Of a stretch of DNA of 64,000 nucleotides, positions 1 to 40,100 are shown in pieces; the first letter of the stretch is position 1, and every line of letters starts with the position of its first letter. Under the pieces are notes generated by a model, which saw only the letters and a list, made by a program, of their open reading frames with translations, did not search any database and was not told the origin of the DNA. The position numbers and the translations under genes were made by a program. The DNA is from Takakia lepidozioides (taxonomy: Eukaryota > Plantae > Bryophyta), in NCBI GenBank assembly GCA_030704615.1, contig CM060731.1:36394001-36458000 (forward strand). The letters run 5' to 3'.

Positions 1-692
1 TGGGGTGGGTTCCTCCCAGGAGAACAGTAATGCCAAGGGCAGATGTGCCCAACCCGGGGTCCGTGCATTTCTCCCTCAAGACTAGTAGGAGGAGGAAGTG
101 TGTTCAGTGCGGTATGCGTCAAAGGTATTTTTGTCACGCGTGTAGAGATGTCTATATGTGCCTTGGACGATGCTTTGTCAAGAGCCATAGCCTTCTCTGA
201 TTATAGATGCTTCTATGTTCAGTAATTGATATGGTTGATTTCTTACTGCAGAGACGTGAAGATCTTTGATGCCAAAGAGGGGGTATCCTCCTTACGGCAC
301 TTTTTCTATGTAGTGGTGTTCTGTCTTTTTCTAAACACAGTGGTGTGTTTGGGGGTTGGTTTGTTGTTGATAGCCATGAAACGTTTGTACTGAGGATCCA
401 GCCGTAGAGAGTCGCTTGACAGTCCAAGGAGAGGTATGATTTTGTGGTTGTGCAGTATTGGGGTTCACTGAGTCCTGATCTGAATGGTTTGTTTGCTACT
501 CCAGCTTTTTGCCTTAGTGTTCACGTAGCTCCGAGGTCTTTGCTGCAACAATTTTGTGTTTCAATTAGGACTGAGTCCATTTTCATTGTGTCTAGTATAA
601 TTATGTGGTAGTCCCCTAGTCAAGCGGGGGTGCGCACAAGGGTGGAGACTCCTTCCCTCCCTACTGGGGAGGAGTCTCCCCCCTTGTGTTCA

Positions 693-1203
693 TGTGTAAG
701 TTGCCAATTGGGGCAAGTTAGTGGGTTCAACTCCCACTCACACAATTCGGCGTGTAAAGGTGGGTTCATCTCTGGTTTTTCTGAGTTTGATTTGATGCTA
801 GTGCTGGCCACATGTTGGTCTTTCTTTGTGTGAGCTGCCAGTTGGGGCAGGCCACTGGGTTCAATTCCCACTCACACACTAGAATTATCTGTGTTCAGGT
901 TTGTATGTCGCCTCATTGTGTTGGAATTTTGCTGGCCTTCAAACTTGTGTAGCTGCCTCATTGTCTCTAAACTTTCGGAGTGTGCAGATTGTGTGGAACT
1001 TGGCCAAAAGCCTTCAGCATGGGCTGCCAGTTGGGGCAGCTCCATGGGTTCAAATCCCACCCATGCTTGGCCACTAAGGGTGGGAGATGAAGGTGAGGCT
1101 GTTTTGCATCTCTATATTTTGGGAGTTTGGGCTTGTGTGGAATTTGGCTTCAGCATGGGCTGCCAGCTGGGGCAGCTCTGTGGGTTCAAATCCCACCCAT
1201 GCT
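693..1203 (+). repeat. Array of four 52-nt tRNA-like elements (acceptor stem + D-like arm + T-arm, no anticodon arm) separated by 82-137 nt spacers
   Basis: Units at 693-744, 827-878, 1016-1067 and 1152-1203. Each has a terminal 7-8 bp stem (tgtgtgag/ctcacaca or agcatggg/cccatgct), a YTGCC-ARYTGG-GGCAR hairpin, and a TGGG-TTCAANT-CCCA T-arm containing the B-box-like GGTTCAANTCC. Confidence 0.85.
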
Positions 1204-1389
1204 CTCCCACTATGGATGGGAGATGAAGTAGTGGGCTGCTGTGCTTGATTCTGGCCTTTGTCTTCATGTTGCTAGACTCCATTTTGTGTGCCTTAGGCTT
1301 GTGTGGAACTTGGGCAAAAGAATGAGAGCAGGTGGAAGCTGATGTGCACATGCCAGCTGTCTTTGTGCTTCAGCAAAATTGCTGCTGCC

Positions 1390-1793
1390 TATGGCATTTT
1401 GACCCCCCTTACTTTGACCAGTTGTAAATCAGAAAATATGAATCCATTTTTTGCATTCTATGGCTCATCAGAATGCCAATGTGCTAGACAACACCTGTAA
1501 GCAGGATGAGGTCCTGCAGATTTCATCCCGTCATTGAAATTGCAAATTCCTCCAATTTCCCTTATTGTTTTGGGAGGGGCCCAAAAAATGGGCCCACACT
1601 CAACGGTGGCGTTTCTCGGATTTTCGCCTGATTGGCCTGGAAATTTACAGGTGTCTGGAAGGGGTAGGTATGAGCAGAATGTCCGGTCAATTTTCCCAAA
1701 AACGTTTTTTTCGCTGAGATATTCTCATTTTTCTGAGCTGGGGTCCACTTTTTTCAAAAAGTCAACATTGGGCACTGGGCGCTTAAGGGTTAA
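1390..1793. mobile_element. Probable right end of a TTAA-flanked (piggyBac-like) DNA transposon; left boundary not defined
   Basis: Ends ...GCGCTTAAGGG|TTAA (TTAA at 1790-1793) after a phased A/T-tract subterminal-like region. Its reverse complement resembles TTAACCCCTAAACTCTCGCGTGGCCC at 16502. No transposase seen. Confidence 0.35.
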
Positions 1794-1800
1794 GGGAGTA

Positions 1801-1890
1801 ATGTTGTTCCTTTCTTCCTTTCGTTCATTTTCGAAGTTACATGTGCATTCCGTGCTGCGGACGTTATGAAGTACCATTTCATTTCATTTC
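1801..1890 (+). mobile_element. Diverged 3' tail of the (CATTT)n LINE family
   Basis: GCGGACGTTATGAAGTACCATTTCATTTCATTTC matches the LINE 3' end GCGGACGTTATAAATCACCATTTCATTTC at 33128-33168. Confidence 0.6.
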
Positions 1891-4800
1891 TCCCTCGCTT
1901 TCGTGGGAGGCATCTGTAATTTTGGAAAAGAGAGTCGAAGATGGACGTGGCCCTTGCGCAAGGACGAGACAAATGGTTCAAGATTCCGTAAGTTTCAGTG
2001 CTCCTTTCTTTCTTTCTATCTCCCTTTACCCCTCTCTCCCACTTTGTTGAATTACAAGGACATCGATGCTCGTCAAGGAATCTCTTTCCCTCCCTTCCGT
2101 TGGAAATTCTGAGATAGAAAATGAAGCGGTGGTGCGATAAGCTACTTGCGCCTCATGTGGACGTCTTAAAGGTCCCTTCTTTCTTCCAATCTCTCACTGA
2201 AGTCTAGGCAGTCAATAGCCCATTCCAGTGCTCTGAGAAAATAAGAAACTGCTTCCGACAATGACTGCAGGCGCCGGTTCTGGGCCACTTGAACAACCAG
2301 AGTCAGCCAGCACAACTTGCGTCTCATGTCAAAGATTGGGAAACTGACGGCCCACCTCCGATCCAGTTTCACTCGAATTGGGGTGACAGCGAGACCTGTG
2401 TCTATGGAGGGCCATCGTCTTGCTTGCTACGCATGCAGCTCGCCATCTTTCTCTTCTGCATCTGCCCCTGCCTCCTCCCCACTCTTCCACATATCTGAGA
2501 ACTGTCGTCTTTCTCATTTGGTTCGTGCACGGGCTTTGCTGCTATGGCTGCCAAGTCAAGGCCCAGCGTACCCTCTGCGCTGTACAAGTGCTGGGTATGA
2601 TGGCGATGCCGGACGCAAACCTGCAAGGCTGGCACAGAAGCAGAAGACGCTTGAGGAGCTGGCTGAGTACGTCAATGTTGATGAACCTGTTCCCCAAGTC
2701 ACTTTAGGTGTGAGCTTACCACCACTTCTGGATATTGCAATTTTGTTTGAAGATGTTCAATTTACCTGGACCTTTGAAGCTGAAAATCTTGCAAAGTGGA
2801 ATCCAACATTGTAGTGGTACATTTGCACTTACTGTACGAGCAGTTTTACAAAAACTTGCTACAATGGGAGGGTGGGTGCAGAGCAAGTGAACGCGAGTTT
2901 CGCAAGGAGTGGGGGTCCCGGAGGTCAGAATGTTAATAAAGGTGATCTCTCTCACACTGTCACTCATGTGTCCCTTGAGCCCTTTGTTTCTTGAAATAGT
3001 TTCTTCTTATTTTACTTCAAAGGCTGCTACATTTCGCTGGAGGGGTTTTCCTATATGCCATAGTAGATGAGTGTTCTTTTGTTTATTTCCCAACATTGTG
3101 TAATTTTACTGCTACTCCTCCTTGGCCACCTTGTCATTTTATTGAGAGTCTTCTGTTGTCTTTTGGAAATCAGAGCATTGAATGTTTAATATTCAAAGGC
3201 TTTGATAGAGCCCATCCCTCAAAGGGTCCACAGACCCACAGGGGAAGAGGGTTAAACTCTCATTTACGCTGGCTTTGGTTGGCCTCATCTCTCTCTCTTC
3301 AAAGTCTCAATCTAGGGGGTGGGTTGGAGCAGTGAACACAAAGGTGGACATGCGTTTCAAAGTTATGGAGGCAAGCTGGCTGCCAGAGAGAATTAGGTTG
3401 AAGCTGCTGCAAACGGTCTGTGCGTGCCAGCTTGAAGCTGTCCAATGTGCGCCTTAGTCTTTCTGCAGTCACATCTAGCTGCAAGCATAATATCAGATTG
3501 CAAATCATACACTCGATAGTCTTAAGAGATCAGCAGATCTAAGAGGTTCAGCCTGCATTTGAAAAATTAAGTTCACACCTGTACCCATGATTACACGAGA
3601 CAGGTTATCGACAATGTAGAGTTTGCTTTGTAGGCATGGAGATGGGAGAGGATAAGATCTTAGTCTCTGCTTGTTGAGGGGTATCTTCCGTCCATATCTC
3701 TGCATGTGTTTTGTGCAGGAAAAGAACCGAATCAACAGTGAGGGAGAGCTAGTGGTATCATCAACCAGGACTAGGACCCAGAAGTATGTCATCTTTGCTC
3801 TTTTAGCTGGTGCAGTTGTGTCAACACTTGTAGCTGCAGAATATCACAGAACCTTCTGCAGACATGTTGTGAGTACATTCTGTCAAGCCAGCGTAGGCCA
3901 TCTCCAGAATAATCAATTCACCTCTATATCCTTCTAGCTAAGGGTTTACTTGTATAGCATACCACTTAAAGCCCCAAACTTTCCCACAGGTACTCCAAAG
4001 ATTCTCATGTCGCTTGCCTGGCAGAAGTGGATAGTGTTAGTTTGTGAAATACTGCACTTCACTTCCCTCTTTGCTTTCAAACCAGTAGTGAGATGGTGCT
4101 TATGAAATTGTTGTGCATTTCTGTGGAACAGGGGAAACATAGAAGATGCGTTGTGCAAAATACAAGTAAGCATGCAGCTCTCTGTGTTCCTCAAACCCTC
4201 CATTTGTCATGGCCATGTGTAAGTGCTAGGGGTCATGGTGTTTCCACCATGGTACATGGTGTATGTCAACAATTCTCCTGTTTGAATTGTAATCTGAAGC
4301 TCAATGCAGCGACCAATAAAATTTGACCCCTGTTTTGCTTTCTCTCAAAGGAAAGAGACAAAATAGAGATGATGCGCAATTATTTGGATACAGGAACTGA
4401 TCACAGCTGCAGCTTACATACCTCCCCCACCCTCAGACGAGAAAATCAAACGCATCAACAAACTGTGAGCTCCATCATTCCAACCTCTACCATCTCACAT
4501 TTGTTTCCAACATTCATAAGTTCAAGAAGGTTCTCCAGTTTTAACGAAGGATGCGATATAACTCAATATGCCATCACGTTCTTTAGTAACCTTATCAGTT
4601 TCTCAACACCAAACAATTGTGATAAAAGATAGCCTAGTAGACTCGTCTTCTGGTGTATGCTTAAGTCCTGTTGCAGATTGTGACCTGCTGGGACAAGACT
4701 TGTCTCCACATGTTCCATGGAAGTTCCCTTCTCTCCGGCATAATTTGACCAGATTAGATTGGTTATTTGGTGCAGTTAACTTCTACATTTTCCTGTTTTA

Positions 4801-25030: not shown

Positions 25031-28000
25031 ATGACTGTTGATTCTAGAGGGTCAGAATACTTGGTTGTAATGGATGATCTAGGAAGACTGCGCTGTAGTT
25101 GTTCTTACAGATGTCAACACTTCGCTCCCGGATTTGCTTGGTTGCCAAAGAGGACATGGTACAACCATGAGAGAAAATCTCAAGCAGGAGAATTGCATCA
25201 CGATGTGAGGAGGCTGTTAAGGCAATATCCTTCTCCTCCGGTATTGTCTACGGACGTCACAGAGGGGCCATCCACGTCTGGTGGAGCTACATTTGTGTCG
25301 CAGGCTTTGAATGAACGACTTCTGCTACCATGTTTTTGTCATTTGTGCAATGGCCAACGGAAATGGACCCAGGGAACGGTGAAGAAGCATTATAGTTACG
25401 AAAAAATGCGGAATCAATTGATGGCCATCCCTACACTAAGAGAAGATGACAGAGAAGAAGGTGTCGATATCTCTCTTCTGGCGAGGGACATGGTGAATAC
25501 TGATACAACCCAGGTGGTCCCAAGTTCTTCTGCCCCTGAATTGGTGCAAGTAAGCTTCGAAGGCCGAGCTCAGAGCTCACAGGAGGCTCTCATGGCGCGG
25601 ATTATTGAATTACAGATGCTTCTTGATAAGTGCCAGACGCCAATCCATGCACAAGGAGAAATCCTGAAGAATTTGTTTGGATCACTGACTGAGCAACCCC
25701 GTGTGATGGACTCAGGGTTCATGGATTACAAAGACTTATCCTTAGGACGATTGTTGTCTCTTCAGGGTTCAGACTGGGATGGAGACATCAATGGATTTCG
25801 AGCCCCCACGTCATGGAAGCAACTTACAAGCATCTACAAGGGTCTTGGCATGGTGGAGGCACAAAAATGGCGACTTTGCACAGGTGACAAGAACGGAGGG
25901 CATGCTCCTGCATTGATGAAGCCTCATGTTGAGGATGATCTTGATATGCAGCTTGACTGTTTATGTGTTCCGAAGACCAGGGTCAAGCATAGAAGAGACT
26001 GCTCTGAGTGTGGTCAGAAGTGCCCCGTGTGCGAGAAAATGAGAAAAGATGTCTTGTCCTTTGAGTATTTGCCTATAAGAGGTATACTAGCTAGTATGTG
26101 TTTAAGCCGCACATTTTGCCACCATTTTTTGGCTTTATGGAGGAACAGGGAAGTATGGAGAGGGCTTCCAAATGATTTCATTCCTGCTACCTGAAGAAGT
26201 TCTAGGATGGCGGGAAGCTACGTGAATATCAAGCATTTTGGGATCCTGAGGCAGATTGGGAAGCTCCCATCATTTGCCCGAATTATATGTGCAAACGTAG
26301 TTTTAGAGCATTTCCCCAGACTTTGAGATGCAAAGAGCTACAACATGGTTGGATTCAGGAGCTTGGGGTGTACTCTTTTCCTTGTCCAGAATGCGCTACT
26401 CGTGTGAAGGCACCACGGCGTTTGCAAAAGATCGGTAACACTTCACATTTTTTTTGCCAACCACATAATTCATTTCTTCCAAGAAGCTCTCTCCCTTTGG
26501 AGCATGCTAGTCTCCAAGTTAACGTCCTGCAGTGATGCCTCCATATTTCAAACATTTGTTTGTTTTTAGTCAAAATTGATGGGTTGGGTTTGACTGTGTT
26601 TGATCATTATGGGTTTTGTTGTTGTAGGGAGATCCCCGGAATTTTGCTCTCTTAGGCCATTAGGATGGCTTCCAGAGTGCAAGGACAAGGCAACGGGACT
26701 GTTGGACACTTGAGGTTGTTGTGCTAAACACAGGGAAGATCTCCCCTTTGGGCCCATTCCCAATCCTCTTCATACCTGCTAGCTCTGATAAGATCATCAA
26801 GCAATCTGACACAAGCATCTTATCTACCTTTTTAGAGAGGGCCCTTGCCACTAGCCCTTTGGGTGGAAGGGCCTGCAATCTATGGAGAAAGATTGTAAGC
26901 CTGAAGAGGGCCTCAGATTGCAATGGTACACATGCGAACTCTGCACCTAGGATCTGAGATGGAGTTGTGCTCCTGGCGCCAAGCATTGCTTGGAGAAAAG
27001 ATGACTGTAATGGTTCCAAATTCTTTTCCCACCAGGAGACAGGGACACCAGGTGCCCAGAACTCACAACCATAGATGGTAGCAGGGCTGACGACGGTGTC
27101 AAACAGCCACTTTTTGGTCGGGAGATGTCGCAGATGTATTTGCTTGCATTTGGCCTGAAGGCGGACAGAGGCCGCCTTACCTTTAGTCAACCTGTCCAAG
27201 GCAATGGCTGCAAAGTGAAACTTGGGGGAGTGGATAACCAGACCTAGGTACCGGTATGATTTCACAATCTCAATTTCATGCTGGTTGAAGATGAATCTAC
27301 AATCAGCCTGGCCATTGAAGACCATGATCTTGGTCTTGCTAAGATTGACCTGCATCCCATAGTCTTTGCAGAACTGTTCCAAAATTTTGAGATGGCGTTG
27401 CAGAAAGACCGGGGATTGTGCCAAAAGGGCAACATCATCAGCATAGAGGACATCTGATTGGGTTGGTCCCCCATCCAATGGGACCCCAACCCCATGGTTT
27501 TTTGATATGTAATTCTCCAAGGCGTCAATGTAGATCCCGAACAGGGTAGGTGAAAGGGGGCAGCCCTATTTGACTCCAATGTTGTTGTGGATCTCGGCTG
27601 AGATATCACCAGCGACGTTGACCATGCCAGTGACAATCTCATACATAGAAGAGATGGCACAAAGGATGTCTGGAGGGACTTCCACTCTATGGAGCCGTTG
27701 GAAGAGAAGGTCCCGAGGAACTGAATCAAAGGCTTTGTGAAAGTCCACGAAGCAAACATAGACCATTCTTTTGTCATAGCGTGCACTTTCCACCATAACT
27801 TGAAGAGTGAAGATGTGGTCAATAGTGGATCGGTTTCGACGGAAACCAGCCTGTCCCTTCATTCAAGAACTAGAAGAAATGTTTATCCATGGCTTCCCTA
27901 TATCATATGCGTACCCGACGGATCTTGTGAGTGAACATCTTTTGGAAGGGCTTGTTGGTGAGACCATTACATTACATGCCATCTTGATGATGTTCAGTGG

Positions 28001-29177
28001 GGATCACCCTGCCTAGTGCAAGGTGGGGGGTCTAAAAGATGGAGGGTACTCAGGTTGTAGGCGTCATGAGCTGAACTTGGAATTGCAAAGAAGAGGTTCA
28101 AGTTCTAGAGCAACTTTGGAGTACCAAAATACACGTGAAGAAGCACGCCACCCCCTTCCAGTGCAAAGTTGCGAGAGCATCTTTGATGCAATAACTGTAT
28201 GGCAGCAATTACCTCCTGGAAAAGAGAGAGTGGTGGAAGAGAGGAGAGGTGGCATATCAGGCCACTCCATCATGTGGCGCTTGTACCATCTGTACGGATT
28301 CGACATTTCTTTGGATCTTGTGTATGATGTAATGCACACCCTGGCTCTAAATGTACTGAAGAAGTATGTTGTTTTGCTGGTTGAGACCATGGAGATGTTA
28401 GGTCGGACAAAAGAGCATGAGGAAGCGCTTGCAATTGCAACACAACACAGACCCAAAGGCTTGGGAGGGCGGTGGCCCAGGATGCTGAAATCCTTGGGTT
28501 ATTATAAGGCAGAAGAGTATCAATTATTTGTGATGTGGTGTTTGCCCTACATAATGGATCATCTTGATTTGAGAAATGATTCAGTCTTGGGTGGTGTAGG
28601 GGTAATACTGATAGAAGTGTGTCGGTTGTTCTACTCTCATTCCCGAAAACATGGATGGACACATGATGGGATGGATACAGCGCGCACACTGTTGGCATCT
28701 TGGCGAGTAAGAGTTGAGGAGAGTTTGGGGTCTAATTCTTCACCCCTTGAACATGTAGCCGGTGAGTTTGAAGCTCGATGTTGACATACACTAATTTCCA
28801 TTTGTGATTTATAGTAGTTTTGACTTCTCAACATTTTGAAAGTTCTGTGGTAATGCAGGAATGAAAGTGCTCAGATTTCTGAAAGCTGTGACTTCTGAAA
28901 TTTGAAAGTTTTGTGGTGATGCAGGTAATGGGGAACTTCTGGATGATGTCCTCAGGCATGGGTGCCATGATGTGTATTGGTGCTACTCTTTTGAGAGGCA
29001 GGTCTCTGATTGTATGACAATTCCTACCAACCAGAAATTGAATGAGATTTCCTATCTCCAGTTCTTCAAACGCCAATGCTTTACCATGACATTCTCATAT
29101 GTTCAGATGGATAATGATGGCATGTTGCCCCATGGACGTGCTTTGAAAAAAATTCACAAGTTTCTTCGCCACCCAAG
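25031..29177 (+). mobile_element. CACTA/EnSpm (CMC)-type transposase, intron-containing, inactivated and 3'-truncated
   Basis: Cys-rich N-terminus (CFCHLC, CSECGQKCPVC), FEYLPIR, intron ~26434-26628, GDPRNFALLGH*DG, FLEPFIQELEEMF, GDHPA*CKVGG..GYSGC, YDVMH, KAEEYQLF, WCYSFER. In-frame stops, a LINE fragment inserted at 26837-27858, and fusion to Copia RT at ~29178. Confidence 0.8.
26837..27858 (-). mobile_element. Internal RT segment of the LINE family, inverted inside the CACTA transposase
   Basis: QAGFRRNRSTIDHIFTL, FVDFHKAFDSV and LYADD motifs. Collinear with 37886-38907 of the full-length copy. No tail and no TSD. Confidence 0.95.
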
Positions 29178-29846
29178 GGTTGTACTAAGCCAGACATTGC
29201 ACATTCAGTGGGAGTGGTCTCACAATTTCTTTCAAATCCCGGACAAACCCATTGGAAAGCAGTGAAGAGGATATTTCGATATCTAAGAGGAACATTAACC
29301 TCTGGTCTACTCTACAAGAGAGTGGAAGATCCAAGTTTGTTGGGGTTTGCTGATGCTGACTGGGCAGGAGACGTTGAGAGTCGAAAATCAACTTCAGGCC
29401 ATTGTTTTCTCCTAGCAGGTGGAGCTGTATCTTGGTCTAGCAAACGACAAGTTGCAACAGTGTTGTCATCAACAGAAGCTGAGTACATGTCCATGATACA
29501 AGCAGCAAATGATGCTATTTGGTTACGGAAGTTGCTTGGAGATTTGGATCATCTTCAATCACTACCTACGACTCTCTATTGTGACAATCAAAGTGCGATT
29601 GCACTAAGTCAGAATCCGAAGTATCATTCAAGGACGAAGCACATTGAAGTGCAACATCACTACATACGGGAAGTTGTATGCAAGGGAGAGATCAAAATGA
29701 TCTATTGTGCTACAGGAGATATGGTTGCGGATGTTTTGACGAAGAGTCTACCACAAACAAAACACATGAAGTGTTCAGCCTTACTTGGTGTCTCTTCTCC
29801 AAAAACAAACGAAGTAGCTAAATGATATGGTTTAATTGAGTGGGAG
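29178..29846 (+). mobile_element. Ty1/Copia 3' pol fragment (end of RT + RNase H) and polypurine tract
   Basis: CTKPDIAHSVGVVSQF, HWKAVKRIFRYLRGT, GFADADWAGD..RKSTSG, SSTEAEY, YCDNQSAI, RTKHIEVQHHYIRE, DMVADVLTK. PPT GAGTGGGAG at 29838-29846. Confidence 0.95.
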
Positions 29847-30153
29847 TGTTGGAAGTAATTAAACATATCTAGAAGACTAAGAGTCTTGAAGGCCAAAGGT
29901 TTAGAAGTCTAAGAGACTATCTTGTTTAACTCACATTTGGAAGGTGAATGGCTAGAAGGTGGATGGTCACCATAGTGGAAGTGGAAGTGACCAAGTAGGA
30001 CTTTCTAGAGACCTTCTTGTACAAGCTCGGGGGTGAAGCCACTAGTCTAAGTGTAAGAGTATGATGGTGGCTTCTATGGTTGGGATGAGAGCTTTAGTTT
30101 TAGCTTTAATCTAAGACTTTAGTTCTTGTTCATGTTCTTGCTCAATTCTAACA
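29847..30153 (+). mobile_element. Complete 307-bp 3' LTR of the Copia element
   Basis: Begins TGTTGGAA directly after the PPT and ends TTCTAACA (terminal inverted repeat, one mismatch). LINE ORF1 sequence resumes immediately after it. Confidence 0.8.
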
Positions 30154-30154
30154 G

Positions 30155-33100
30155 GAAACACACAGAACTACGACGTCTACAATGGCTCGGGAGCTCCAAG
30201 CTCACAAGGCAGAGGCCTCCTCCTGGGCTAATATATTTAAGGGGAGCACATCCAACAACAGTCCTCACTCTCTGGAGGAGACAGTCTTGGCTACCTTGCG
30301 AGAGGAACAACAACGGGCTTTCAAAGCCCTTAATATCAGGGTCACTGGGAAGCTAGGGGGCCTTGCTGAGGGGGACCCTCTTGACGCTGCCACCAGCCTT
30401 ATTCAGCAAAACCTTGCTCTCCCACGGGGCGCGAGTGGCATTGAAAGGGCTTGGCGTGCAGGATCTTCAGAGCACAAAGTTCTCTTCATTAGATTCAAGG
30501 ACAAGGGTGCTTGGGATAGAGTCCTCAGGCAGAGGCCTCAATTGAGAGGTCAGGGTATATACCTCAACGATGACTTGACCTTTGCAATACAACGCCATGC
30601 GGGCGCAACTCTTGCAGGTTAAGCAAGCTCGAGCTCAAGGGCACTATGCCGTGTACCGAGATGGGAGGGTAATTGTCCGGGAGCACGAACGTCGCCCCTT
30701 TAGCTCTAAATAGGGGTTGGGGCACCATGAGACCAACGCACGCTCACATCTACACATTGGTTCATGGAACTGTAATGGCTCGTTGTGGAGCCACCCTCAA
30801 GGGCTTCTAGATATTATTTCCAAGTGTGATGTTCGTTTTCTTTTGGAAACTCATGCGTATGAAGGAAAGGACCCCCCTTTTATTCTCGGGTATAGCTTTC
30901 AGTCAGTGATTCGTCCACGTACAGGTCTCAAAAAATCTGGAGATGTGGCTTGTTACTTTGCTGACTGGCTTCTCCCACTTATCTCCTTCCCATACAAAGA
31001 CCCACTGGCAAGGTACATTTGGTATCACATCAAAGGCTACAACATCCTGCTGGCAGGATGTTATTTTGCTCCGGCCGCATCTCCGCACAGCGGCCTACAT
31101 ATTCGAACAAATTCACCATATGTTCCATTGGAAGACGATATGGCCCGTCTCCGTACCCCACAAACGGACATTTTCTTGGTTGGAGATTTCAACGCCCGTA
31201 CAGGATCACTACAGGCCCCCACCTTCGACCACACAGATCCTCTACACATCCAACGCTCGCATATGGAATTGGAGAGGCAAAGTGCAGATTCCTCTTGCGA
31301 AATCACAAGTTACGGTCACCATCTACTCAAGTTTTGTGAAACTCAGGGGCTGTCCATTTACAATGGAACAACCAACTTCAAATCCTCCAGCCAGTTCACT
31401 TGCCACACGTACAAGGGCCAAAGCGTGGTTGACTATCTCTTGGGGAGCCCCAACAAGCCTGATAGAATAAGCTCATTTTACATCACGAGGTACCCGGATT
31501 CTGATCACTCTTGCCTTTCCTTTGCATTTCCTTCCATCTCCCTCCCCATGAGGATCCCCTCTGCGTCTCTTCCCTTACACCCACGTATCCACTTTAATAC
31601 CCCTTTCTCTCACTTACACGACGCCGAGTATGAAACATACCTAGCGTCAACCCTCCCTTCCATTCTACATCTATCATCTCCTAATGACAAGGCTACACAT
31701 CTTACTCAAGCCCTTTGGGACTCAGCCCTGCGATCCTTTCCCGTCACCCTTCCATCTACCTCCTCACCTTTCTCCACTCGTCGTTACGCACCATTTTATG
31801 ATGAGGAATGCAAGACTGCTAGACGTCGTATCAAATTTTTACTACTTGATACCAATTCTTCTCCAGAGTCCACTAATCTTGCTCTTAAGCACTATAAGTC
31901 CCTCATTAGATCCAAAAAGCAAGCCTACACTATCAAGTTGCAATCTTCTTTCCTTGCTAAAATCAGATTTTCTCCTCGATATTTTTGGTCCCTCCTTAAA
32001 CCTCATATAGATCCCCCCCCAATCACTGACATTCATGTCTGGCATGAGTATGCACAGTCTTTGTACCATTCCCCAACCCAAACTCCTTCTCCTATAACCT
32101 CTAAACCCCTTCACTTCTCTCTCTTTACTACAACCAATGTCAGTAAGGCAATCAAGAAGCTGCAAAATGGGAGAGCGGTGGACATTTCAGGACTTCAGAG
32201 TGAATTCATCAAGCATGCTGCACCTACTTTAGCCCCTTTTATAGCTAACCTCTTCAATGAGGTGGAGCAACGGGGCTTTCCAACAGAGTGGACAAAGAGC
32301 ATCATCCACCCACTTTTTAAGAGCGGTGACAGGCTCGCACCGACAAACTATCGTACTATCATGGTGTCCTCATTACTTGCTAAACTGTTTGGGGCAGTAG
32401 TGGCCATGGAACTGGATGATTGGGCTGAGTACTCTGGCATTCGTGCTGACATCTATGAGGCTCAAAGCTGCAGGTTTCAGGAACTCCTGGTATGCTCGAG
32501 TGGACAGTTTATTTCAACGTAACGGACTTTCTACTGCTTTCCTATTACCAATGAACCCAGATGAGGTGGACATCACATCCAGACATGACCGCAACAGACT
32601 CATTCGAAGAGAGCTTATGGAATTACATGTCAAGAGAACTTGGATGCTACCCAATCTCACGACAAAGCTCCACTTCTATCGAGAGACATTCTTGGTGCTC
32701 CGCGATGATAGAATCTTGAGACCAAATTACCTTTCAGCACCCTTATCTCTTTCCCTCTTGAGGGCATTGGGGCGGTTCAGGGTGGTTTCCCACAACCTAC
32801 GGATAGAGACTGGTAGATGGGAAAACCTGCAACAGGAGGACCGCCTATGTCCAGCTTGCATAGGGCGCAGCAAGGAAATTGAAACTGAAGAACACTTCTT
32901 CTTCTACTGCCCACTATACTACGAGATCTGTGGGAGATTCCACTGTTTATTCAGTGGAACCCAAACTCTCACTGATGTCTTTCACTATGAGGATAAAAAA
33001 TGCGTGGCAGCCTACCTACACGAGGCCTTCACCCTTAGACAATCGCTAGAACATTAATTGTGGTTTCTGGATTTGTTCCTCTCTCATGTTTTCTTCCATT

Positions 33101-33168
33101 TTGTCCCATAAGCTCTACGAGCTTTCCGCGGACGTTATAAATCACCATTTCATTTCATTTCATTTCAT
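30155..33168 (+). mobile_element. LINE (RTE/RTEX-like) copy: ORF1 C-terminus, intact endonuclease region, internal deletion of most of RT, C-terminal CCHC region and (CATTT)n tail
   Basis: EN motifs SWNCNG, LETH, GDFNAR, SVVDY and SDH. Deletion junction at ~32449 (..GGCATTCGTGCTG-A-CATCTATGAGG). SHNLRIETGRW..RLCPAC..EEHFFFYCPLY. Tail CATTTCATTTCATTTCAT. Confidence 0.95.
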
Positions 33169-33252
33169 CTTTTGCCAACAATTCTTGCGAATCCAAATCC
33201 TCGGTCAGGTCTATCATGCAGATCTGGCATTCTTTGGGGCCATCCGTAGTCA

Positions 33253-34311
33253 TTAGCTTGTGCGACACCCGATTGCAGTTGTGGGGTTACCCAGGATTTT
33301 CCCAAGTTGCAATTGCAGGATAGCGATGGTTCTCCTCCTGCACATTTGACCCAGCATTGCCATGCTTCCTCGGCATCCTCCGAGCTTCATGGACTCATCC
33401 TTCTTCAGTAAAGACCACTTCCTTTTTAGGATTTTTCTAGGAGTTTCCCAAGTTGCAATGTTCGGTCCATTGCTCTGGCCATGTACCAATGATGTCGCCC
33501 CATGGGCATAGTCAAAGCCCATTTGCAAGCTGCCCTGGAGTAAGTCCCGTGCTTCTGTATCTTTTGCGGACAGTTCATGGAAACTTAGATCCTCGGTCAG
33601 GTTTGTCACGATTGGGCATCCCCTCGATGACGTTGCGATTGAGGATGCAATCTCCATCTGCAACACCGGCTGCAGCCTGTTGTGGGGTTCTGTAGGAGCA
33701 ATTCCGGCTCGCATGCTCTTGCCTTCGGATATTTGTTCTCATTTTCCCGGGCAGGCCGCATTTGCGGATCCAATCTCCTCAGTCAATAGCTCCTGCAACA
33801 TGGGCTGCCTATTGTGGGGATACCTAGGAATTTCCCAAGTCACTGCAATATCTCTGCCTCCTTCGGATTGTTCATGCCTTCGATGCCGGATTATTTCTGC
33901 CTCCAATGCTCTGTCCCATTTTTCATGGTAGGCTGCAATTGAGGATCCAATCTCCTCAGTCATCAGATCCTACAACATCGGCTGCCTGCTGTTGTGGGGA
34001 TCCCTAGGAGTTTCCCAAATCACTGCAATGTTATTCCTGTCTCCAATGCTCTGTCCTTCGGATTGTTGGATCCAATTTTCCCAAGAACTTGTCATTGGGC
34101 ATCGTCCGATCTCCTTTTCTGTGTCCCAGTCGTGTGGGCCAGGAAGAACGAACACCTTTATCTTTGGAGGTACCTGTACAGCCCGCAATTTCAATCTCAA
34201 CAGTGGCCAGCTTACACCAAAATTACAGTACACTAAGGACATTCTCCAGCCACATAAATAAGCCAGCGCAACATCAACGGTAATTAGAGAAGGACAAGAG
34301 GAGGACGTCAT
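33253..34311 (-). pseudogene. Degenerate coding region with internally repeated peptide (IAVxWETPRxPHNxxQPML), unknown family
   Basis: Consecutive minus-strand ORFs 33970-34311, 33739-33963 and 33253-33714 share IAVIWETPRDPHNSRQPML / IAVTWEIPRYPHNRQPML / IATWETPRK and TEEIGS repeats, broken by stops. Confidence 0.4.
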
Positions 34312-37154
34312 TAATCACCATGTCGACATAGTTGGATCGGTAGCCTGGGCCCGCAACATCTACTAGAAAGCATTGAAAAGGAAATTTAGAAAACTGTGGC
34401 TTCCTAGCTACCTATTGAATAATTTAAGGACAGCAGTTTGCTATTATCTGCTACCATAATTTAATCTAACGCAGTTGCAAACTACTAGCTTTGCATCATG
34501 TCCATATCCAAGTTACTATTCTTTTATCCAGAACTCAGTTCATCGAGACGTCATTGGAGCACAAATATTATGGTTTTCCCAACATAAGTGGGTTTCCATT
34601 CCTGTTCATACCTTCTCCTCATTGAACCGCGAGGAAAAAGCACCGGAACTTGACAGGGACAGCTGCATGCTCAACAGTATATCAGCAATTAGTTATGTTG
34701 GGAACTGCAAGAAGGATCATTTGAAACACAATATAGTGATGATCTAACTGTGCAATAGATATATTCCCTTGAGATGGTTTTGTGTAATCTATGATCGACG
34801 AAAGGAATAGACAGACCTCAAGCTGGTCAACAGCCCGATAATTAGATTGCGAACCCATCTCCTCTAGTTGCTGCTCCATTAGGAATGGCTTCTTTGGACT
34901 TGTATTTGTGTTATCAAATTACTCGATGTCTGGATAGCTGCTGCCTCAACATTTGAATTACCAGTTGGTCGATCCAGATCTGCCTTGCTGCACAAACAAC
35001 AATATTTCTGCTCAGGCTGTTAGAGGTCTTCAGAAAACCCTAGTCATAATTTCGTCATGATAATCTGATCTGGCTTCCCAAGGAATCATCTTTCATGCCT
35101 TAGATGGAAATGGTTGTGAACTTACCTTGCAAGGTCTGAAGACTCCCCAGAAATCCTCTTGCTCTACTAAGGTTATATGACCCTAAATGAGAGTTTTCCA
35201 CATGACTCCACCAACCAAGTTTTGGCCGGCAACCATGAATATAACCTTACTTTTAAACACTACCCTCCCACTTGCAGTCAGTAGCAGTAACATTCAAGAC
35301 CTCATTTTCAAACGTTACCCTCCCCAACAGCTACAGTCAATAACTTTAAACTGGCTCTAGTCGTTGAAGGAGCTATTTACGGGTGATCGAGCCTTGTGGC
35401 TTCTGTGCTCTATGTTATCTACTGTCCAAAAACCTCCCTGCAGGTTCCCCAGAACTGTAGAAGGCAGATGTCTGCTCAGGAACTCTCCAGCCATAGAATA
35501 CTGAGCCCTTGCCCTCTTCTTCCGTAGAGTTCCATGTGCTTGAGCTCTTGACAACTCGAGAAGGATATATATTGAGTGCGGGACTCTGTCATGTTAATGT
35601 GTACGTATGTTGATCTATGTAAGCAATAATCTGTGGTTGCTCCTGTGCACTAGCAGTGCATTACTGTTTGCTAGTTTCATACCCTGGTAGTTGTGAAACA
35701 CAACCAGCTCCAGAAGGGTGTACCACCAGAGGTATGCACAAAGGGGTAGGTATATTTAGTCAACTGCGCGCATCTCCATGGCATCTCCAGGTCCCTGTGT
35801 TGTTAACAGCAAGTAAGTTTGTAGGGTGGAGGCTGCTCATATGTTTACATTGTTCATCACCGAGTTGACTCTAGACTTCCGTCGATGCTATCTCAGTCTT
35901 CCTCTTGGTTGTCAGGCTATTGTTCTTAAGTGTTTTGTCTTGAAATGGTAAGATATCTCCCACTGCCTGCAGAGACATAGTGATGAAGGCCCTCCCGTGG
36001 GATGGAGTAGTAGTAATAAAAGGCAACTTAGACTGAAATCCAAGAGCTGGCATGGCTAGTTGGTGCATCAATGGCTGCAGACCAAAAGGAGGCCCTTGTT
36101 TCTCAAGCTCTGCTCTTGATCCTCCTACTCTAATATTTAGATGGTACCGTGAGACTTCAAACAGTGCAGGAAGGCAGCTAGCTAGGTGGTGGTCATCTGA
36201 AGGGGTCGCACGCACATGCAGGTGGTCATATGATAGACATGGTAGTCGTATGCTAGTGGTGTGGTCCTGTCGTAGTCGAGGACGCCAGAGAGGGTCCTTC
36301 CGTGGAATGGAAAGCCGATCTTAGGGACAAGGGAAAGTGTAATTAAAGGAAGAGCCTGAGTGTTCAATGGCTGCAGTGATGAGCAAGGTCATACTGATTG
36401 GACTCCAAACCCAGTACTACTTCCTGCACGGTCTGTTTGAAGCAAGAAAACTTATAGCTCACTGACCAAGGGCTCCCCCGGTGGTCTATAAGACTGATCC
36501 CTTGCTATATATCCGGCCAGTAGCCGAAGGCCAAAGAAATTCCTTCAGAGAGCAAGGGGCTCCCCGATATTATGCCTGTGCAACTCCCTTGCTCCCCACT
36601 CTGCGGAGGACTCAAAAACTGTCAGTTTGCCTGCTACGTCCCACAAAATATAAGATCGGTGAGGTCACAGCTCCCAAGGAGTTTAAGGTGCTAAGGGCTA
36701 CATCAGTAGCTAGAAACATTCTTTGACATCTGAATATAGGAAATGTACCTTCAGTTGAAAAATGTGGTGGATGCAGCGCAATGGTCGGGAATCTTGAGGG
36801 AGGGCCGTAATGCTGGCCTGGTCGACACAGCTCGCTGTGCCCCCTCGCTGCCGGTCACTCTTGCTTACAGCTCGCTCACTGCGCCTATGGACAGCACTAA
36901 TTCTTGCTGCCCTGCAGCAATCACTTCGAATCAATTATCCTCCAATCTGAAAATCTGTTCCTGCCCAAGAAAGCAATACACAGCTATTAATCCTCGCTCA
37001 ACGTCTCAACAGAGGAAGCTGGTAACCATGTGTCCAGTCTCTGGCCAGTCTGAATGAAGAAGGGCCGTGGCACAATGAAGACCCTGTACTCCGGAAGGGG
37101 CTGGAAGGACTAGCAACCCGCTGAAAACTGAAGGAAGCAAGAGCAAGGAAGAAA

Positions 37155-40100
37155 TGAAATGAATGAAATGAATGAAATGAAATGGTGCTTTATAACGTCC
37201 GCGGAAAGCTCGTAGAGCTTATGGGACAAAATGGAAGAAAACATGAGAGAGGAACAAATCCAGAAACCACAATTAATGTTCTAGCGATTGTCTAAGGGTG
37301 AAGGCCTCGTGTAGGTAGGCTGCCACGCATTTTTGATCCTCATAGTGAAAGACATCAGTGAGAGTTTGGGTTCCACTGAATAAACAGTGAAATCTCCCAC
37401 GGATCTCGTAGTATAGAGGGCAGTAGAAGAAGAAGTGTTCTTCAGTTTCAATTTCCTTGCTGCGCCCTATTCAAGCTGGACATAGGCGGTCCTCCCGTTG
37501 CAGGTTTTCCCATCTGCCAGTCTCTATCCGTAGGTTGTGGTAACCCACCCTGAACCGCCCCAATGCACTCAAGAGGGAAGGAGATAAGGGTGCTGAAAGG
37601 TAATTTGGTCTCAAGATTCTATCATCGCGGAGCACCAAGAATGTCTCTCGATAGAAGTGGAGCTTTGTCGTGAGATTGGGTAGCATCCAAGTTCTCTTGA
37701 CATGTAATTCCATAAGCTCTCTCCGAATGAGTATGTTGCGGTCATGTCTGGATGTGATGTCCACCTCATCTGGGTTCATTGGTAATAGGAAAGCAGTAGA
37801 AAGTCCGTTACGTTGAAATAAACTGTCCACTCGAGCATACCAGGAGTTCCTGAAACCTGCAGCTTTGAGCCTCATAGATGTTGTGAGGGCCCTTGCCACT
37901 AGCCCTTTGGGTGGAAGGGCCTGCAATATATGGAGAAAGATTGTAAGCCTGAAGAGGGCCTCGGATTGCAATGGTACACATGCGAACTCTGTACCTAGGA
38001 TCTGAGATGGAGTTGTGCTCCTGGCGCCAAGCATTGCTTGGAGAAAAGATGACTGTAATGGTTCCAAATTCTTTTCCCACCAGGAGACAGGGACACCAGG
38101 TGCCCAGAACTCACAACCATAGATGGTAGCAGGGCTGACGACGGTGTCAAATAGCCACTTTTTTGGTCGGGGGATGCCGCAAATGTATTTGCTTGCATTT
38201 GGCCTGAAGGCGGATGGAGGCCGCCTTACCTTTAGTCAACCTGTCCAAGGCAGTGGCTGCAAAGTGAAACTTGGGGGAGTGGATAACCAGACCTAGGTAC
38301 CGGTATGATTTCACAATCTCAATTTCATGCTGGTTGAAGATGAATCTACGATCAGCCTGGCCATTGAAGACCATGATCTTGGTCTTGCTAAGATTGACCT
38401 GCATCCCATAGTCTTTGCAGAACTGTTCCAAAATTTTGAGATGGCGTTGCAGAAAGGCCGGGGATTGTGCCAAAAGGGCAACATCATCAGCATAGAGGAC
38501 ATCTGATTGGGTTGGTCCCCCATCCAATGGGACCCCAACCCCATGGTTTTTTGATATGTAATTCTCCAAGGCGTCAATGTAGATCCCGAACAGGGTAGGT
38601 GAAAGGGGGCAACCCTGTTTGACTCCAATGTTGCTGTGGATCTCGGCTGAGAATTCACCAGCGACGTTGACCATGCCAGTGACAATCTCATACATAGAAG
38701 AGATGGCACAAAGGATGTCTAGAGGGACTTCCACTCTATGGAGCCGTTGGAAGAGAAGGTCCCGAGGAACTGAATCAAAGGCTTTGTGAAAGTCCACGAA
38801 GCAAACATAGACCATTCTTTTGTCATAGCGTGCACTTTCCACCATAACTTGAAGAGTGAAGATGTGGTCAATAGTGGATCGGTTTCGATGGAAACCAGCC
38901 TGTCCCTCAACACGAATGCCAGAGTACTCAGCCCAATCATCCAGTTCCATGGCCACTACTGCCCCAAACAGTTTAGCAAGTAATGAGGACACCATGATAG
39001 TACGATAGTTTGTCGGTGCGAGCCTGTCACCGCTCTTAAAAAGTGGGTGGATGATGCTCTTTGTCCACTATGTTGGAAAGCCCCATTGCACCACCTCATT
39101 GAAGAGGTTAGCCATAAAAGGGGCTAAAGTAGGTGCAGCATGCTTGATGAAGTCACTCTGAAGTCCTGAAATGTCCACCGCTCTGCCATTTTGCAGCTTC
39201 TTGATTGCCTTACTGATATTGGCTGTAGTAAAGAGAGAGAAGTGAAGGGGTTTAGAGGTTATAGGAGAAGGAGTTTGGGTTGGGGAATGGTACAAAGACT
39301 GTGCATACTCATGCTAGACATGAATGTCAGTGATTGGGGGGGGATCTCTATGAGGTTTAAGGAGGGACCAAAAAGATCGAGGAGAAAATCTGATTTTAGC
39401 AAGGAAAGAAGATTGCAACTTGATAGTGTAGGCTTGCTTTTTGGATCTAATGAAGGACTTATAGTGCTTAAGAGCAAGATTAGTGGACTCTGGAGAAGAA
39501 TTGGTATCAAGTAGTAAAAATTTGATGCGACGTCTAGCAGTCTTGCATTCCTCATCATAAAATGGTGCGTAACGACGAGTGGAGAAGGGTGAGGAGGTAG
39601 ATGGAAGGGTGACGGGAAAGGATCGCAGGGCTGAGTCCCAAAGGGCTTGAGTAAGATGTGTAGCCTTGTCGTTAGGAGATGATAGATGTAGAATGGAAGG
39701 GAGGGTTGACGCTAGGTATGTTTCATACTCGGCGTCGTGTAAGTGAGAGAAAGGGGTATTAAAGTGGATACGTGGGTGTAAGGGAAGAGACGCAGAGGGG
39801 ATCCTCACGGGGAGGGAGATGGAAGGAAATGCAAAGGAAAGGCAAGAGTGATCAGAATCCGGGTACCTCGTGATGTAAAATGAGCTTATTCTATCAGGCT
39901 TGTTGGGGCTCCCCAAGAGATAGTCAACCACGCTTTGGCCTTTGTACGTGTGGCAAGTGAACTGGCTGGAGGATTTGAAGTTGGTTGTTCCATTGTAAAT
40001 GGACAGCCCCTGAGTTTCACAAAACTTGAGTAGATGGTGACCGTAACTTGTGATTTCGCAAGAGGAATCTGCACTTTGCCTCTCCAATTCCGTATGCGAG

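What the first reader, a model, noticed from the sequence alone, without database searches (positions are those of the whole stretch)
693..1203. Array of four covarying, anticodon-less 52-nt tRNA mimics separated by spacers: candidate RNase P/Z-processed small-RNA cassette
Seen: four units of identical length (52 nt). Each folds into a 7-8 bp acceptor-like stem, a hairpin whose loop AGTTGG/AGCTGG/AATTGG matches the tRNA D-loop, and a T-arm with a TTCAA(A/T/C)T loop. There is no anticodon arm. The stems covary between copies: acceptor tgtgtgag/ctcacaca versus agcatggg/cccatgct, and D-stem ttgcc/ggcaa versus ctgcc/ggcag. This argues for selection on RNA structure rather than a drifting satellite. 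Spacers are 82, 137 and 84 nt and mostly different, though units 3 and 4 share flanks (TTGTGTGGAA.TTGG leader). T-runs follow the units (776-780, 927-930, 1102-1105, 1282-1285). Known: RNase P/PRORP and RNase Z recognise the acceptor/T-arm/elbow and cut tRNA-like elements such as plant mitochondrial t-elements and mascRNA. Inference: the array could be a natural polycistronic tRNA-mimic/spacer cassette releasing small or guide RNAs, or a set of Pol III mini-genes. It may be carried by the TTAA-ended element that terminates at 1793.
Basis: partly seen in the sequence, partly recalled or inferred. Interest (0 to 1): 0.88.

Follow-up and report, generated by a model that had tools for sequence, protein, structure and literature searches.

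The report
tRNA-like RNA modules inside a piggyBac transposon
Behind the transposase gene of a piggyBac-type jumping gene in a plant genome sit four 52-base copies of a tRNA lacking its anticodon arm, kept in shape by matching mutations; they most likely recruit the cell's tRNA-cutting enzymes to trim the transposon's RNA, which has not been described for a DNA transposon.

Summary
Observation: confirmed. Four 52-nt units (693-744, 827-878, 1016-1067, 1152-1203, + strand) share one fold:
- an 8-bp acceptor stem;
- a 5-bp hairpin with a D-loop-type A-R-Y-T-G-G loop;
- a T-arm with a TTCAANT loop;
- no anticodon arm.

Five base pairs carry compensatory double changes. The loops are invariant, the 5-nt junction varies freely, and the flanks cannot be aligned except between units 3 and 4.

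Context:
- The units lie in sense orientation about 490 nt after the stop codon of a piggyBac-type transposase tail.
- A very stable 23-bp hairpin ends 4 nt before unit 1.
- Contigs from two runs of the same species label, at least one containing spliced RNA, match the units and a 3' subterminal block but not the spacers.

Best reading (about 0.45): RNA-level RNase P / RNase Z recognition modules in the transposon's 3' untranslated RNA, working like mascRNA.

Not supported:
- T-runs as Pol III terminators; their spacing is at chance level.
- Spacers as guide-RNA cargo; they are unstructured and not conserved.
- Processing itself is untested.

Twenty loci of related piggyBacs lack the units. 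No paper was found describing this.

The scan has flagged the same kind of array on other DNA of this genome: at least eight unchecked first-reader notes, none followed up.

The parts
3..200 (+). C-terminal Cys-rich tail of a piggyBac-type transposase ORF (stop codon at 198-200); the rest of the gene lies upstream of the window
   Evidence: Translation. The phmmer hits P0001, P0003 and P0005-P0007 align to their own C-termini. P0001 and P0010 carry Pfam PF13843 DDE_Tnp_1_7. BLASTP of the tail against P0010 gives 46% identity.
634..690 (+). Long hairpin (arms 635-657 and 666-688, 8-nt loop) ending 4 nt before unit 1
   Evidence: 23-nt arms, 91% complementary.: -46.8 kcal/mol, z = -5.75, and none of 200 shuffles fold as well.
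693..744 (+). tRNA-like unit 1 (acceptor type TGTGT.AG / CTCACACA; one A-C mismatch)
   Evidence: (74.3 bits)
827..878 (+). tRNA-like unit 2 (same acceptor type as unit 1)
   Evidence: (78.3 bits)
1016..1067 (+). tRNA-like unit 3 (acceptor type AGCATGGG / CCCATGCT)
   Evidence: (79.5 bits)
1152..1203 (+). tRNA-like unit 4 (same acceptor type as unit 3; 5-bp T stem)
   Evidence: (78.8 bits)
745..826 (+). Spacer 1: no excess structure and not alignable to the other spacers
   Evidence: z = -0.5
879..1015 (+). Spacer 2; its last 30 nt form the leader shared with the unit 4 period
   Evidence: family D3; z = +1.5
985..1294 (+). Recent tandem duplication of about 140 nt (leader + unit + trailer) that produced units 3 and 4; a third leader at 1299-1320 has no unit
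   Evidence: (D2: 81 nt at 90%; D3)
1432..1776 (+). 3' subterminal block shared with other copies of the family
   Evidence: contigs of X1 and X2 cover 1432-1657 and 1700-1776 and then diverge
1787..1793 (+). Putative element end: GGG followed by the TTAA target site
   Evidence: Read directly from the sequence. Not verified: the 5' end is outside the window, and other copies stop matching at 1776.

Best explanation
The four units are RNA-level tRNA look-alikes carried in the 3' untranslated part of a piggyBac-type DNA transposon, on the same strand as the transposase. Each keeps a 12-bp acceptor/T-stem stack, a T-loop, and a D-type hairpin whose two G residues can dock on the T-loop to form the tRNA elbow. 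Each lacks the anticodon arm.

Most likely they are transcribed as part of the transposase (Pol II) transcript and act as recognition signals for the host tRNA-processing enzymes, as in MALAT1/mascRNA or plant mitochondrial t-elements. RNase P would cut at 692/693, 826/827, 1015/1016 and 1151/1152. RNase Z would cut one base after each unit.

The first cut would leave a transposase mRNA ending 4 nt after a very stable hairpin, a poly(A)-independent protected end. It would also release 52-nt tRNA-like RNAs.

Shown here: the fold, covariation, loop conservation, sense orientation, position behind the transposase, the adjoining hairpin, and the presence of unit-bearing copies in contigs of same-species runs.
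Inferred: transcription of this copy, cleavage by RNase P/Z, and the benefit to the element.
For: - Fold and covariation.
- Loops: the hairpin loop reads A-R-Y-T-G-G (D-loop positions 14-19) and the T-loop reads T-T-C-A-A-N-T, both invariant at the consensus positions. The 5-nt junction varies at every column.
- Conserved islands: unit-to-unit alignment z-scores are 10-26, against 3 or less for flanks except between u3 and u4.
- Other copies: at 80% likeness or more, contigs of two runs with the same species label match only 679-747, 829-878, 989-1094 and 1155-1202 within 202-1407, at 85-96% identity. The coding tail matches at about 80-82%. For the unit-3-like contig, all 5 reported differences inside the unit fall in loop or junction columns and none in stems.
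- Transcription: one 712-nt X1 contig carries both the transposase tail (up to 201) and a unit-1-like copy. X1 contains spliced RNA: a contig joins 1987 to 2271 across a GT..AG intron of the neighbouring gene. The unit-bearing contigs are therefore probably transcripts.
- No AATAAA-type signal lies on the + strand in 1-1800.
- The hairpin directly upstream has z = -5.75.
- PMC4797305: Arabidopsis nuclear PRORP3 cleaves an anticodon-deleted pre-tRNA like wild type (kreact 1.48 vs 1.72 per min; KM 1.7 vs 1.5 nM). Deleting the D domain raises KM to 86 nM. The cut site is set by the acceptor and T domains.
- PMC11693755: two conserved D-loop G residues plus the T-loop form the elbow by which RNase P and RNase Z recognise mascRNA.
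Against: - There is no direct evidence for cleavage, discrete ends or CCA addition. Contigs cannot show ends or strand.
- The tool only guesses that X1 and X2 are RNA. DNA carry-over cannot be excluded for the transposon-derived contigs.
- Covariation rests on two lineages within one locus.
- The minus strand folds almost as well because the stems contain no G-U pairs. Unit 1's A-C mismatch would be a G-U pair on the minus strand.
- Why four units would be needed is unexplained.
- Removing the poly(A) tail could just as well reduce expression as stabilise the mRNA.
- Twenty loci of related piggyBacs (tail identity about 30-46%) have no such units, so the cassette is not essential to piggyBac biology.
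Confidence: 0.45

Rival explanations
1. Inert relic. The units descend from tRNA or tRNA-like sequence that was captured and tandemly amplified inside an ancestral piggyBac. The stem complementarity and tRNA-type loops are inherited from two different source sequences or from past selection, and the units do nothing for the element today.
For: - Units 3 and 4 are plainly a recent tandem duplication with a partial third period.
- There are only two independent lineages.
- Related piggyBacs lack the units.
- This locus itself is not covered at 99% or more by the RNA-type runs.
Against: - The flanks have diverged beyond alignment while the units stay 67-94% identical.
- In other copies the units are conserved at least as well as the coding tail, while the spacers are not seen at all at 80%.
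- Changes avoid stems and consensus loop positions.
- Two independent losses of exactly the anticodon arm would be an odd coincidence.
Confidence: 0.25
2. DNA-level Pol III / TFIIIC elements. Each unit would be a mini Pol III gene with an internal A-box-like and B-box promoter, or a TFIIIC-binding site acting as a chromatin boundary that shields the transposon from silencing.
For: - GGTTCAANTCC in all four units matches the B-box consensus GGTTCRANNCC, and TGCCAGTTGG resembles an A box.
- T4-5 runs lie 31-78 nt downstream.
- Other tRNA-carrying mobile elements (Helenus type, PMC10886601) rely on such boxes.
Against: - The T-runs are at chance density.
- The A-like and B boxes are only 12 nt apart, far closer than in tRNA genes. 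That such spacing impairs a type-2 promoter comes from my own knowledge and was not tested.
- Compensatory stem changes are not needed for protein binding to DNA and point to an RNA structure.
- The A-like box is 2 nt shorter than the consensus.
Confidence: 0.15
3. Small-RNA or guide cassette. The tRNA mimics are punctuation marks, and the spacers or the hairpin are the functional products released by RNase P/Z. Known parallels are tRNA-snoRNA and tRNA-pre-miRNA transcripts.
For: - The layout alternates unit and spacer.
- A 23-bp hairpin abuts unit 1, so an RNase P cut would define its 3' end.
Against: - The spacers have no excess structure (z = -0.5 to +1.5).
- They do not match anything else in the 64-kb window.
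- No Rfam family matches at gathering score.
- They are not conserved in other copies at 80% or more.
- No target was found for the hairpin arms; this was not searched genome-wide.
Confidence: 0.07
4. Miniature LTR retrotransposon of the Helenus type nested in the piggyBac. The repeated leader + unit segments would be tiny LTRs carrying a tRNA look-alike. The short purine-rich trailer would be the internal primer-binding site and polypurine tract.
For: - This genome is reported to hold Helenus-type elements (scan notes; unchecked by me).
- The u3/u4 repeat is 81-108 nt long with about 30-55 nt between copies.
- TGG follows unit 3, and a purine-rich run lies at 1078-1098.
Against: - Only the 52-nt core is shared by all four units, so there would have to be three unrelated LTRs.
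- The TGG is not kept after unit 4.
- There are no TG..CA termini for u3/u4 and no target-site duplications.
- Helenus LTRs carry full tRNA-like sequences, and ARAGORN finds none here.
Confidence: 0.05

Closest known systems
mascRNA / menRNA modules at the 3' ends of vertebrate MALAT1 and NEAT1 (Rfam RF01684)
   Same: Both are small tRNA-like folds embedded in sense orientation downstream of a stabilising RNA structure in a Pol II transcript. In both the elbow is built from two D-loop G residues and the T-loop. mascRNA is recognised by RNase P and RNase Z and is not aminoacylated (PMC11693755, PMC8457004).
   Different: The Rfam score is 21.7 bits against a gathering score of 42.5. mascRNA keeps an anticodon-stem equivalent, whereas these units have none. 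Here there are four units rather than one. A plain hairpin stands in place of the U-rich/A-rich triple helix. The host is a plant transposon, not a vertebrate lncRNA. Processing is not shown.
Engineered anticodon-deleted pre-tRNA substrates of plant protein-only RNase P (PMC4797305)
   Same: The architecture is the same: acceptor stem, D domain and T domain joined by a short linker. PRORP3 processes that variant with wild-type kinetics at the canonical site.
   Different: Those are laboratory constructs derived from a bacterial tRNA-Gly. The units here are natural and multi-copy, with a 5-bp hairpin stem and a 6-nt loop instead of a 4-bp D stem and a longer loop.
Plant mitochondrial t-elements (PMC1920247)
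   Same: They are tRNA-like structures that act only as RNase P/Z cleavage signals to define mRNA ends.
   Different: t-elements lie in mitochondrial transcripts. This array lies in nuclear-type DNA next to a spliced gene and inside a DNA transposon.
tRNA-carrying mobile elements: tRNA-derived SINEs and Helenus miniature LTR retrotransposons (PMC10886601)
   Same: They are mobile elements that carry tRNA-derived sequence with box A/B-like motifs.
   Different: Those are retroelements in which a full-length tRNA-like head serves as the Pol III promoter. Here the carrier is a cut-and-paste DNA transposon, the units lack the anticodon arm, they sit in an internal array behind the transposase, and only the 52-nt core is conserved.
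RNA stability and processing modules carried by transposons, such as ENE triple helices in plant transposon RNAs (PMC12501189) and ribozymes in retroelements (own knowledge)
   Same: The logic is the same: the element brings its own RNA module to shape or protect the end of its transcript.
   Different: The structure differs, and the mechanism relies on host RNase P/Z rather than on capturing the poly(A) tail or on self-cleavage.

Membership tests
Canonical tRNA gene | Cloverleaf with an anticodon arm, detectable by tRNA finders | tested here: not met
   ARAGORN finds no gene in the window. No Rfam family reaches its gathering score. Only 5 nt lie between the hairpin and the T stem.
Canonical tRNA gene | Acceptor plus T stems stacking to 12 bp; T-loop T54-T55-C56-R57-A58; G18-G19 in the D loop | tested here: met
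   The stems are 8+4 or 7+5 bp. The T-loop TTCAANT and the hairpin loop A-R-Y-T-G-G are invariant at these positions.
mascRNA-menRNA (RF01684) | Score at or above Rfam's gathering threshold | tested here: not met
   21.7 bits against 42.5, E = 0.12, for unit 4 only.
mascRNA-menRNA (RF01684) | Cleaved from its host transcript by RNase P and RNase Z, then CCA-tailed | not testable with these tools
   Only assembled contigs were available, and they cannot show RNA ends.
tRNA-derived SINE | tRNA-related head plus body plus 3' tail, dispersed as whole units with target-site duplications | tested here: not met
   Only 52 nt are shared, and the flanks are unalignable. All four units sit in one array on one strand. 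There is no A-rich or simple-repeat tail.
Helenus-type miniature LTR retrotransposon | Two LTRs with TG..CA ends, each carrying a tRNA-like sequence, flanking a primer-binding site and a polypurine tract | tested here: not met
   Repeats extend beyond the core only for u3/u4. TGG follows unit 3 only. There are no TG..CA ends for u3/u4.
piggyBac superfamily transposon (the carrier) | DDE_Tnp_1_7 transposase with a C-terminal Cys-rich domain | tested here: inconclusive
   Only the last 65 residues are in the window. They align to the C-termini of proteins carrying PF13843. The tail alone gets no Pfam hit.
piggyBac superfamily transposon (the carrier) | TTAA target duplication and CCC...GGG termini | tested here: inconclusive
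   GGG|TTAA lies at 1787-1793. The 5' end is outside the window. Other copies lose similarity at 1776.
Plant mitochondrial t-element | Located in a mitochondrial transcript | tested here: not met
   The array lies next to a gene with a spliceosomal GT..AG intron confirmed by a spliced contig, and next to transposase and LINE sequences.

The most novel reading that the evidence does not exclude
A family of plant piggyBac DNA transposons has built the host tRNA-processing pathway into its own gene expression. An array of anticodon-less tRNA mimics makes RNase P and RNase Z cut the transposase transcript. This yields a poly(A)-independent, hairpin-capped mRNA and a set of exportable 52-nt tRNA-like RNAs. 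It would be the first mascRNA-type system in plants and the first in any DNA transposon. It would also be a natural, compact punctuation cassette of the kind now engineered for multiplexed guide RNAs.
Probability: 0.35. Interest if true: 0.8.

Novelty: new variant of a known kind. Interest (0 to 1): 0.62.

Why it matters
If the units are processed, this is a DNA transposon that controls the 3' end of its own mRNA by borrowing tRNA maturation enzymes. It would be a plant counterpart of the MALAT1/mascRNA mechanism that arose independently.

That would bear on three questions:
- how transposons escape or tune host RNA surveillance;
- what plant nuclear RNase P cuts besides tRNAs;
- how small a tRNA mimic can be and still be recognised.

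Practically, a 52-nt natural anticodon-less module that plant enzymes recognise would be a shorter alternative to full tRNAs in polycistronic tRNA-gRNA designs. piggyBac is also a widely used gene-transfer vector.

If the units prove to be relics, the finding is only a curiosity of transposon sequence evolution.

Tried and rejected
Attempts to fetch more copies for a proper covariation test all failed:
- The strict unit pattern gave 0 hits in metagenome, prokaryote-genome and viral contigs.
- A relaxed pattern returned only prokaryotic class II tRNAs (Leu, Ser; variable arm + T arm). These score 35 bits or less with the unit model, against 74-80 for the units.
- Searching the 65-aa transposase tail and a spurious ORF running through units 3-4 found nothing in the word-indexed protein search.
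- Eight ORFs of the region are not in the protein collection.
- The HMMER search of the tail and a follow-up search with P0001 reached only relatives with about 30-46% tail identity, all from metagenome or Logan contigs. None of their 20 loci holds a unit.

Other negative results:
- No further copy of anything in 1-1800 exists elsewhere in the window.
- No degenerate extra unit was detected in 1-1800.
- The look-up of sequencing runs listed no holder of the stretch, only two small runs added by species label.
- No paper links piggyBac or a transposase mRNA with tRNA-like elements.

Readings rejected or left open:
- Satellite: rejected, because the period varies and only the core is conserved.
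- Transposase-binding DNA palindromes: rejected, because two different acceptor sequences occur in one element while the unpaired loops keep the tRNA consensus.
- tRNA-mediated mRNA mobility signal: not excluded and not testable here.
- The hairpin as a class II variable arm rather than a D arm: less likely. It abuts the 5' acceptor strand, lies 4-5 nt from the T stem, and has a D-loop-type sequence. This is not resolved.

Full report
**What is there.** Window 693-1203 holds four 52-nt units on the + strand: 693-744, 827-878, 1016-1067 and 1152-1203. The spacers between them are 82, 137 and 84 nt.

Each unit folds on its own into the same three-way junction. The energies are -18.0, -22.0, -24.2 and -27.1 kcal/mol, with z-scores of -2.35, -1.66, -2.24 and -2.65. 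The junction has three parts:
- an 8-bp closing stem;
- directly after it, a 5-bp hairpin with a 6-nt loop;
- after a 5-nt linker, a 4-5-bp stem with a 7-nt loop.

RNAalifold predicts the same consensus structure without being told it. The closing stem and the last stem together make 12 bp (8+4 or 7+5), the length of the acceptor/T-stem stack of a tRNA.

The 7-nt loop reads T-T-C-A-A-N-T, which matches T54, T55, C56, R57 and A58. The 6-nt loop reads A-R-Y-T-G-G, which matches D-loop positions 14-19 including G18 and G19. Nothing stands where the anticodon arm should be.

ARAGORN calls no tRNA in the window. No Rfam family reaches its gathering score. Below threshold, unit 4 scores 21.7 bits against mascRNA-menRNA (gathering score 42.5). 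With the sequence upstream of it, it scores 26.3 bits against tRNA-Sec (gathering score 47).

**More than chance.** On the common structure 98.5% of cells pair. Five pairs have changed on both sides while staying complementary: four in the acceptor stem between u1/u2 and u3/u4, and one in the hairpin stem of u1.
- The covariation score is 0.373 against 0.169 +/- 0.052 in column shuffles, reached by 1 of 500.
- When the 3' partners are slid by 1-3 columns the score falls to 0.04-0.08.
- The consensus positions of both loops never vary.
- All five linker columns vary.
- The only uncompensated stem change is an A-C in unit 1.

This is the pattern expected of an RNA whose shape and loop sequences are under selection. 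The caveat is that the four units amount to only two independent lineages. Units 3 and 4 come from a recent tandem duplication of about 140 nt, with a partial third period at 1295-1320 that has the leader but no unit.

The units are conserved islands. Unit-to-unit alignments have z-scores of 10-26, whereas the 60 nt before and 80 nt after them do not align (z of 2.7 or less) except between u3 and u4. A covariance model built from the units finds only these four in 64 kb.

- The T-runs after the units are real. However, runs of four or more T occur about every 90 nt in this T-rich stretch. The observed distances (31, 48, 34, 78 nt) are ordinary against a median of 60 nt from random positions.
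- The spacers show no excess structure (z = -0.5, +1.5, +0.1 and -0.1).
- The spacers match nothing else in the window.

**Surroundings.** Window 3-200 is the end of an ORF whose last 65 residues form a Cys-rich tail. An exhaustive HMMER search finds nine relatives. Several align through their own C-termini and lie on contigs where the same or adjoining ORFs carry Pfam DDE_Tnp_1_7, the piggyBac transposase domain. The tail is 46% identical to P0010 and 41% to P0001.

The units are therefore in sense orientation, starting 493 nt after the transposase stop codon.

Arms 635-657 and 666-688 form a 23-bp hairpin (-46.8 kcal/mol, z = -5.75) that ends 4 nt before unit 1. No AATAAA-type signal occurs on the + strand in 1-1800.

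The sequence GGG followed by TTAA at 1787-1793 fits a piggyBac 3' terminus. I could not verify it, because the 5' end is outside the window and contigs from other copies stop matching at 1776.

**Other copies and transcription.** No public run was listed as holding the stretch. Two small runs with the same species label were offered. I laid their contigs on 1-2000 at 80% likeness or more.

Between the transposase stop and position 1407, contigs match only four places, each with its observed identity:

| Place matched | Differences / identity |
|---|---|
| 679-747 | 8 differences in 69 nt |
| 829-878 | 2-4 differences in 45 nt |
| 989-1094 | 9 differences in 106 nt |
| 1155-1202 | about 85-90% identity |

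- These places are the units and their immediate edges. The spacers are not covered.
- The coding tail (18-113) matches at only about 80-82%.
- For the unit-3-like contig, the five differences reported inside the unit lie in hairpin-loop columns 16 and 19 and linker columns 27-29, with none in stems. Only positions at least about 30 nt from the ends of an aligned piece are reported, so this check is possible for that one contig alone.
- One 712-nt X1 contig carries both the end of the transposase ORF (up to 201) and a unit-1-like copy.

The tool only guesses that these runs are RNA. One X1 contig, however, continues after position 1988 with 30 letters that occur once in the window, at 2272-2301. 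It therefore skips 1988-2270, which begins GTAAGT and ends CAG. That is a spliced mRNA of the neighbouring gene.

X1 thus contains RNA, and the unit-bearing contigs are probably transcripts of other family members. DNA carry-over cannot be excluded. Contigs say nothing about strand or ends.

The scan's own index lists at least eight first-reader notes, none followed up, describing arrays of two to five such units, often with a long hairpin, behind piggyBac transposases elsewhere in this genome. I treat these as leads only. They agree with what the contigs show.

**Distribution.**
- The strict unit pattern is absent from the metagenome, prokaryote-genome and viral collections.
- A relaxed pattern hit only prokaryotic class II tRNAs. 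In these a variable arm precedes the same kind of T arm, and they score 35 bits or less with the unit model.
- Twenty loci carrying related piggyBac transposases hold no unit.

As far as these data reach, the cassette is specific to this lineage.

**How it most likely works.** Plant nuclear RNase P is a protein-only enzyme. For Arabidopsis PRORP3, PMC4797305 reports:
- Removing the anticodon domain of a pre-tRNA leaves kinetics unchanged (kreact 1.48 vs 1.72 per min; KM 1.7 vs 1.5 nM).
- Removing the D domain raises KM to 86 nM.
- The acceptor and T domains alone fix the cut site.
- The authors conclude that only the anticodon domain is entirely dispensable.

The units keep exactly these parts and nothing else. 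My best reading (about 0.45) is that they are cleavage signals in the transposon's 3' untranslated RNA:
- RNase P would cut before each unit.
- RNase Z would cut after each discriminator base.
- The first cut would leave the transposase mRNA ending 4 nt after the strong hairpin.

This works like MALAT1/mascRNA and like plant mitochondrial t-elements (PMC1920247). It is not a member of either family (see the membership tests). What the element gains is inference. Candidates are a protected end without poly(A), dosage control, insulation from read-through, or the small RNAs themselves.

**Rivals.**

| Reading | Confidence | Main point |
|---|---|---|
| Inert tRNA-derived relic | 0.25 | Fits the tandem duplication and the absence from relatives; fits poorly with the island-like conservation |
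| Pol III gene or TFIIIC-binding DNA element | 0.15 | The B box is perfect, but the boxes are 12 nt apart, the T-runs are at chance, and stem covariation is not needed for DNA binding |
| Spacers or hairpin as cargo | 0.07 | No support for the spacers |
| Nested Helenus-type miniature LTR element | 0.05 | Repeats extend beyond the core only for u3/u4; no TG..CA ends; TGG follows unit 3 only |

**Novelty.** Full-text searches found no paper linking piggyBac or a transposase mRNA with tRNA-like modules. Known tRNA-carrying mobile elements are retroelements with full-length tRNA-like promoters (PMC10886601). Known transposon-borne RNA end modules are of other kinds, such as ENE triple helices (PMC12501189).

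I rate this a new variant of a known kind: a tRNA-like processing element in a new carrier and with a new minimal architecture.

**Limits.** I had only one locus as sequence. The transposase body and the 5' end are outside the window. No raw RNA reads were available. The plant identity of the genome comes from the scan's notes, not from my own tests. That the genome is eukaryotic, with spliceosomal introns, is shown.

Noticed in passing
window 1864-2301: A host gene starts about 70-150 nt beyond the putative transposon end. Its exon runs to 1987 with an ATG at 1941. A canonical GT..AG intron spans 1988-2270, and the next exon starts at 2271. A spliced X1 contig confirms the join (its loose end matches 2272-2301). 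The transposon therefore sits in this gene's promoter region.
   Followed up: partly
window 1810-1943: Contig depth is very high (about 3,500 in X1 and 1,100 in X2), with many loose ends at 1857-1860 and 1890-1896. This coincides with a (CATTT)3 microsatellite at 1875-1890, so it is probably just low-complexity matching at the 80% threshold.
   Followed up: partly
window 1071-1083 and 1204-1222: Small hairpins start right after units 3 and 4. The trailer motif GGGTGGGA at 1078-1085 is the exact complement of the T-stem/acceptor 3' strand TCCCACCC of unit 3 at 1055-1062. It could compete with the tRNA-like fold, or it may be a decayed unit fragment. A similar GGTGGGTTCATCTC lies at 759-772, after unit 1.
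   Followed up: no
window 1657-1700: Contigs of other copies in both runs skip 42 nt here. This is an indel polymorphism in the 3' subterminal block of the family.
   Followed up: no
window 25031-40228: LINE fragments on both strands: ORFs with reverse-transcriptase (RVT_1) and endonuclease (Exo_endo_phos) domains at 26663-27520(-), 30717-32519(+), 38150-38995(-) and 39317-40228(-). Another finding of the scan on this window concerns this region.
   Followed up: no
L132 1642-2288 and 3343-5504: On one metagenome contig, a related piggyBac transposase lies about 1 kb from two fragments matching eukaryotic large-subunit rRNA (Rfam, 61 and 75 bits).
   Followed up: no
L109 4420-4511 and other loci: Prokaryotic class II tRNAs (Leu, Ser) share the motif TGGGG, then 7-9 nt, then TGGGTTCAANTCCCAC, because of their variable arm plus T arm. 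Any pattern search for these units must include the 5' half of the hairpin to avoid them.
   Followed up: yes
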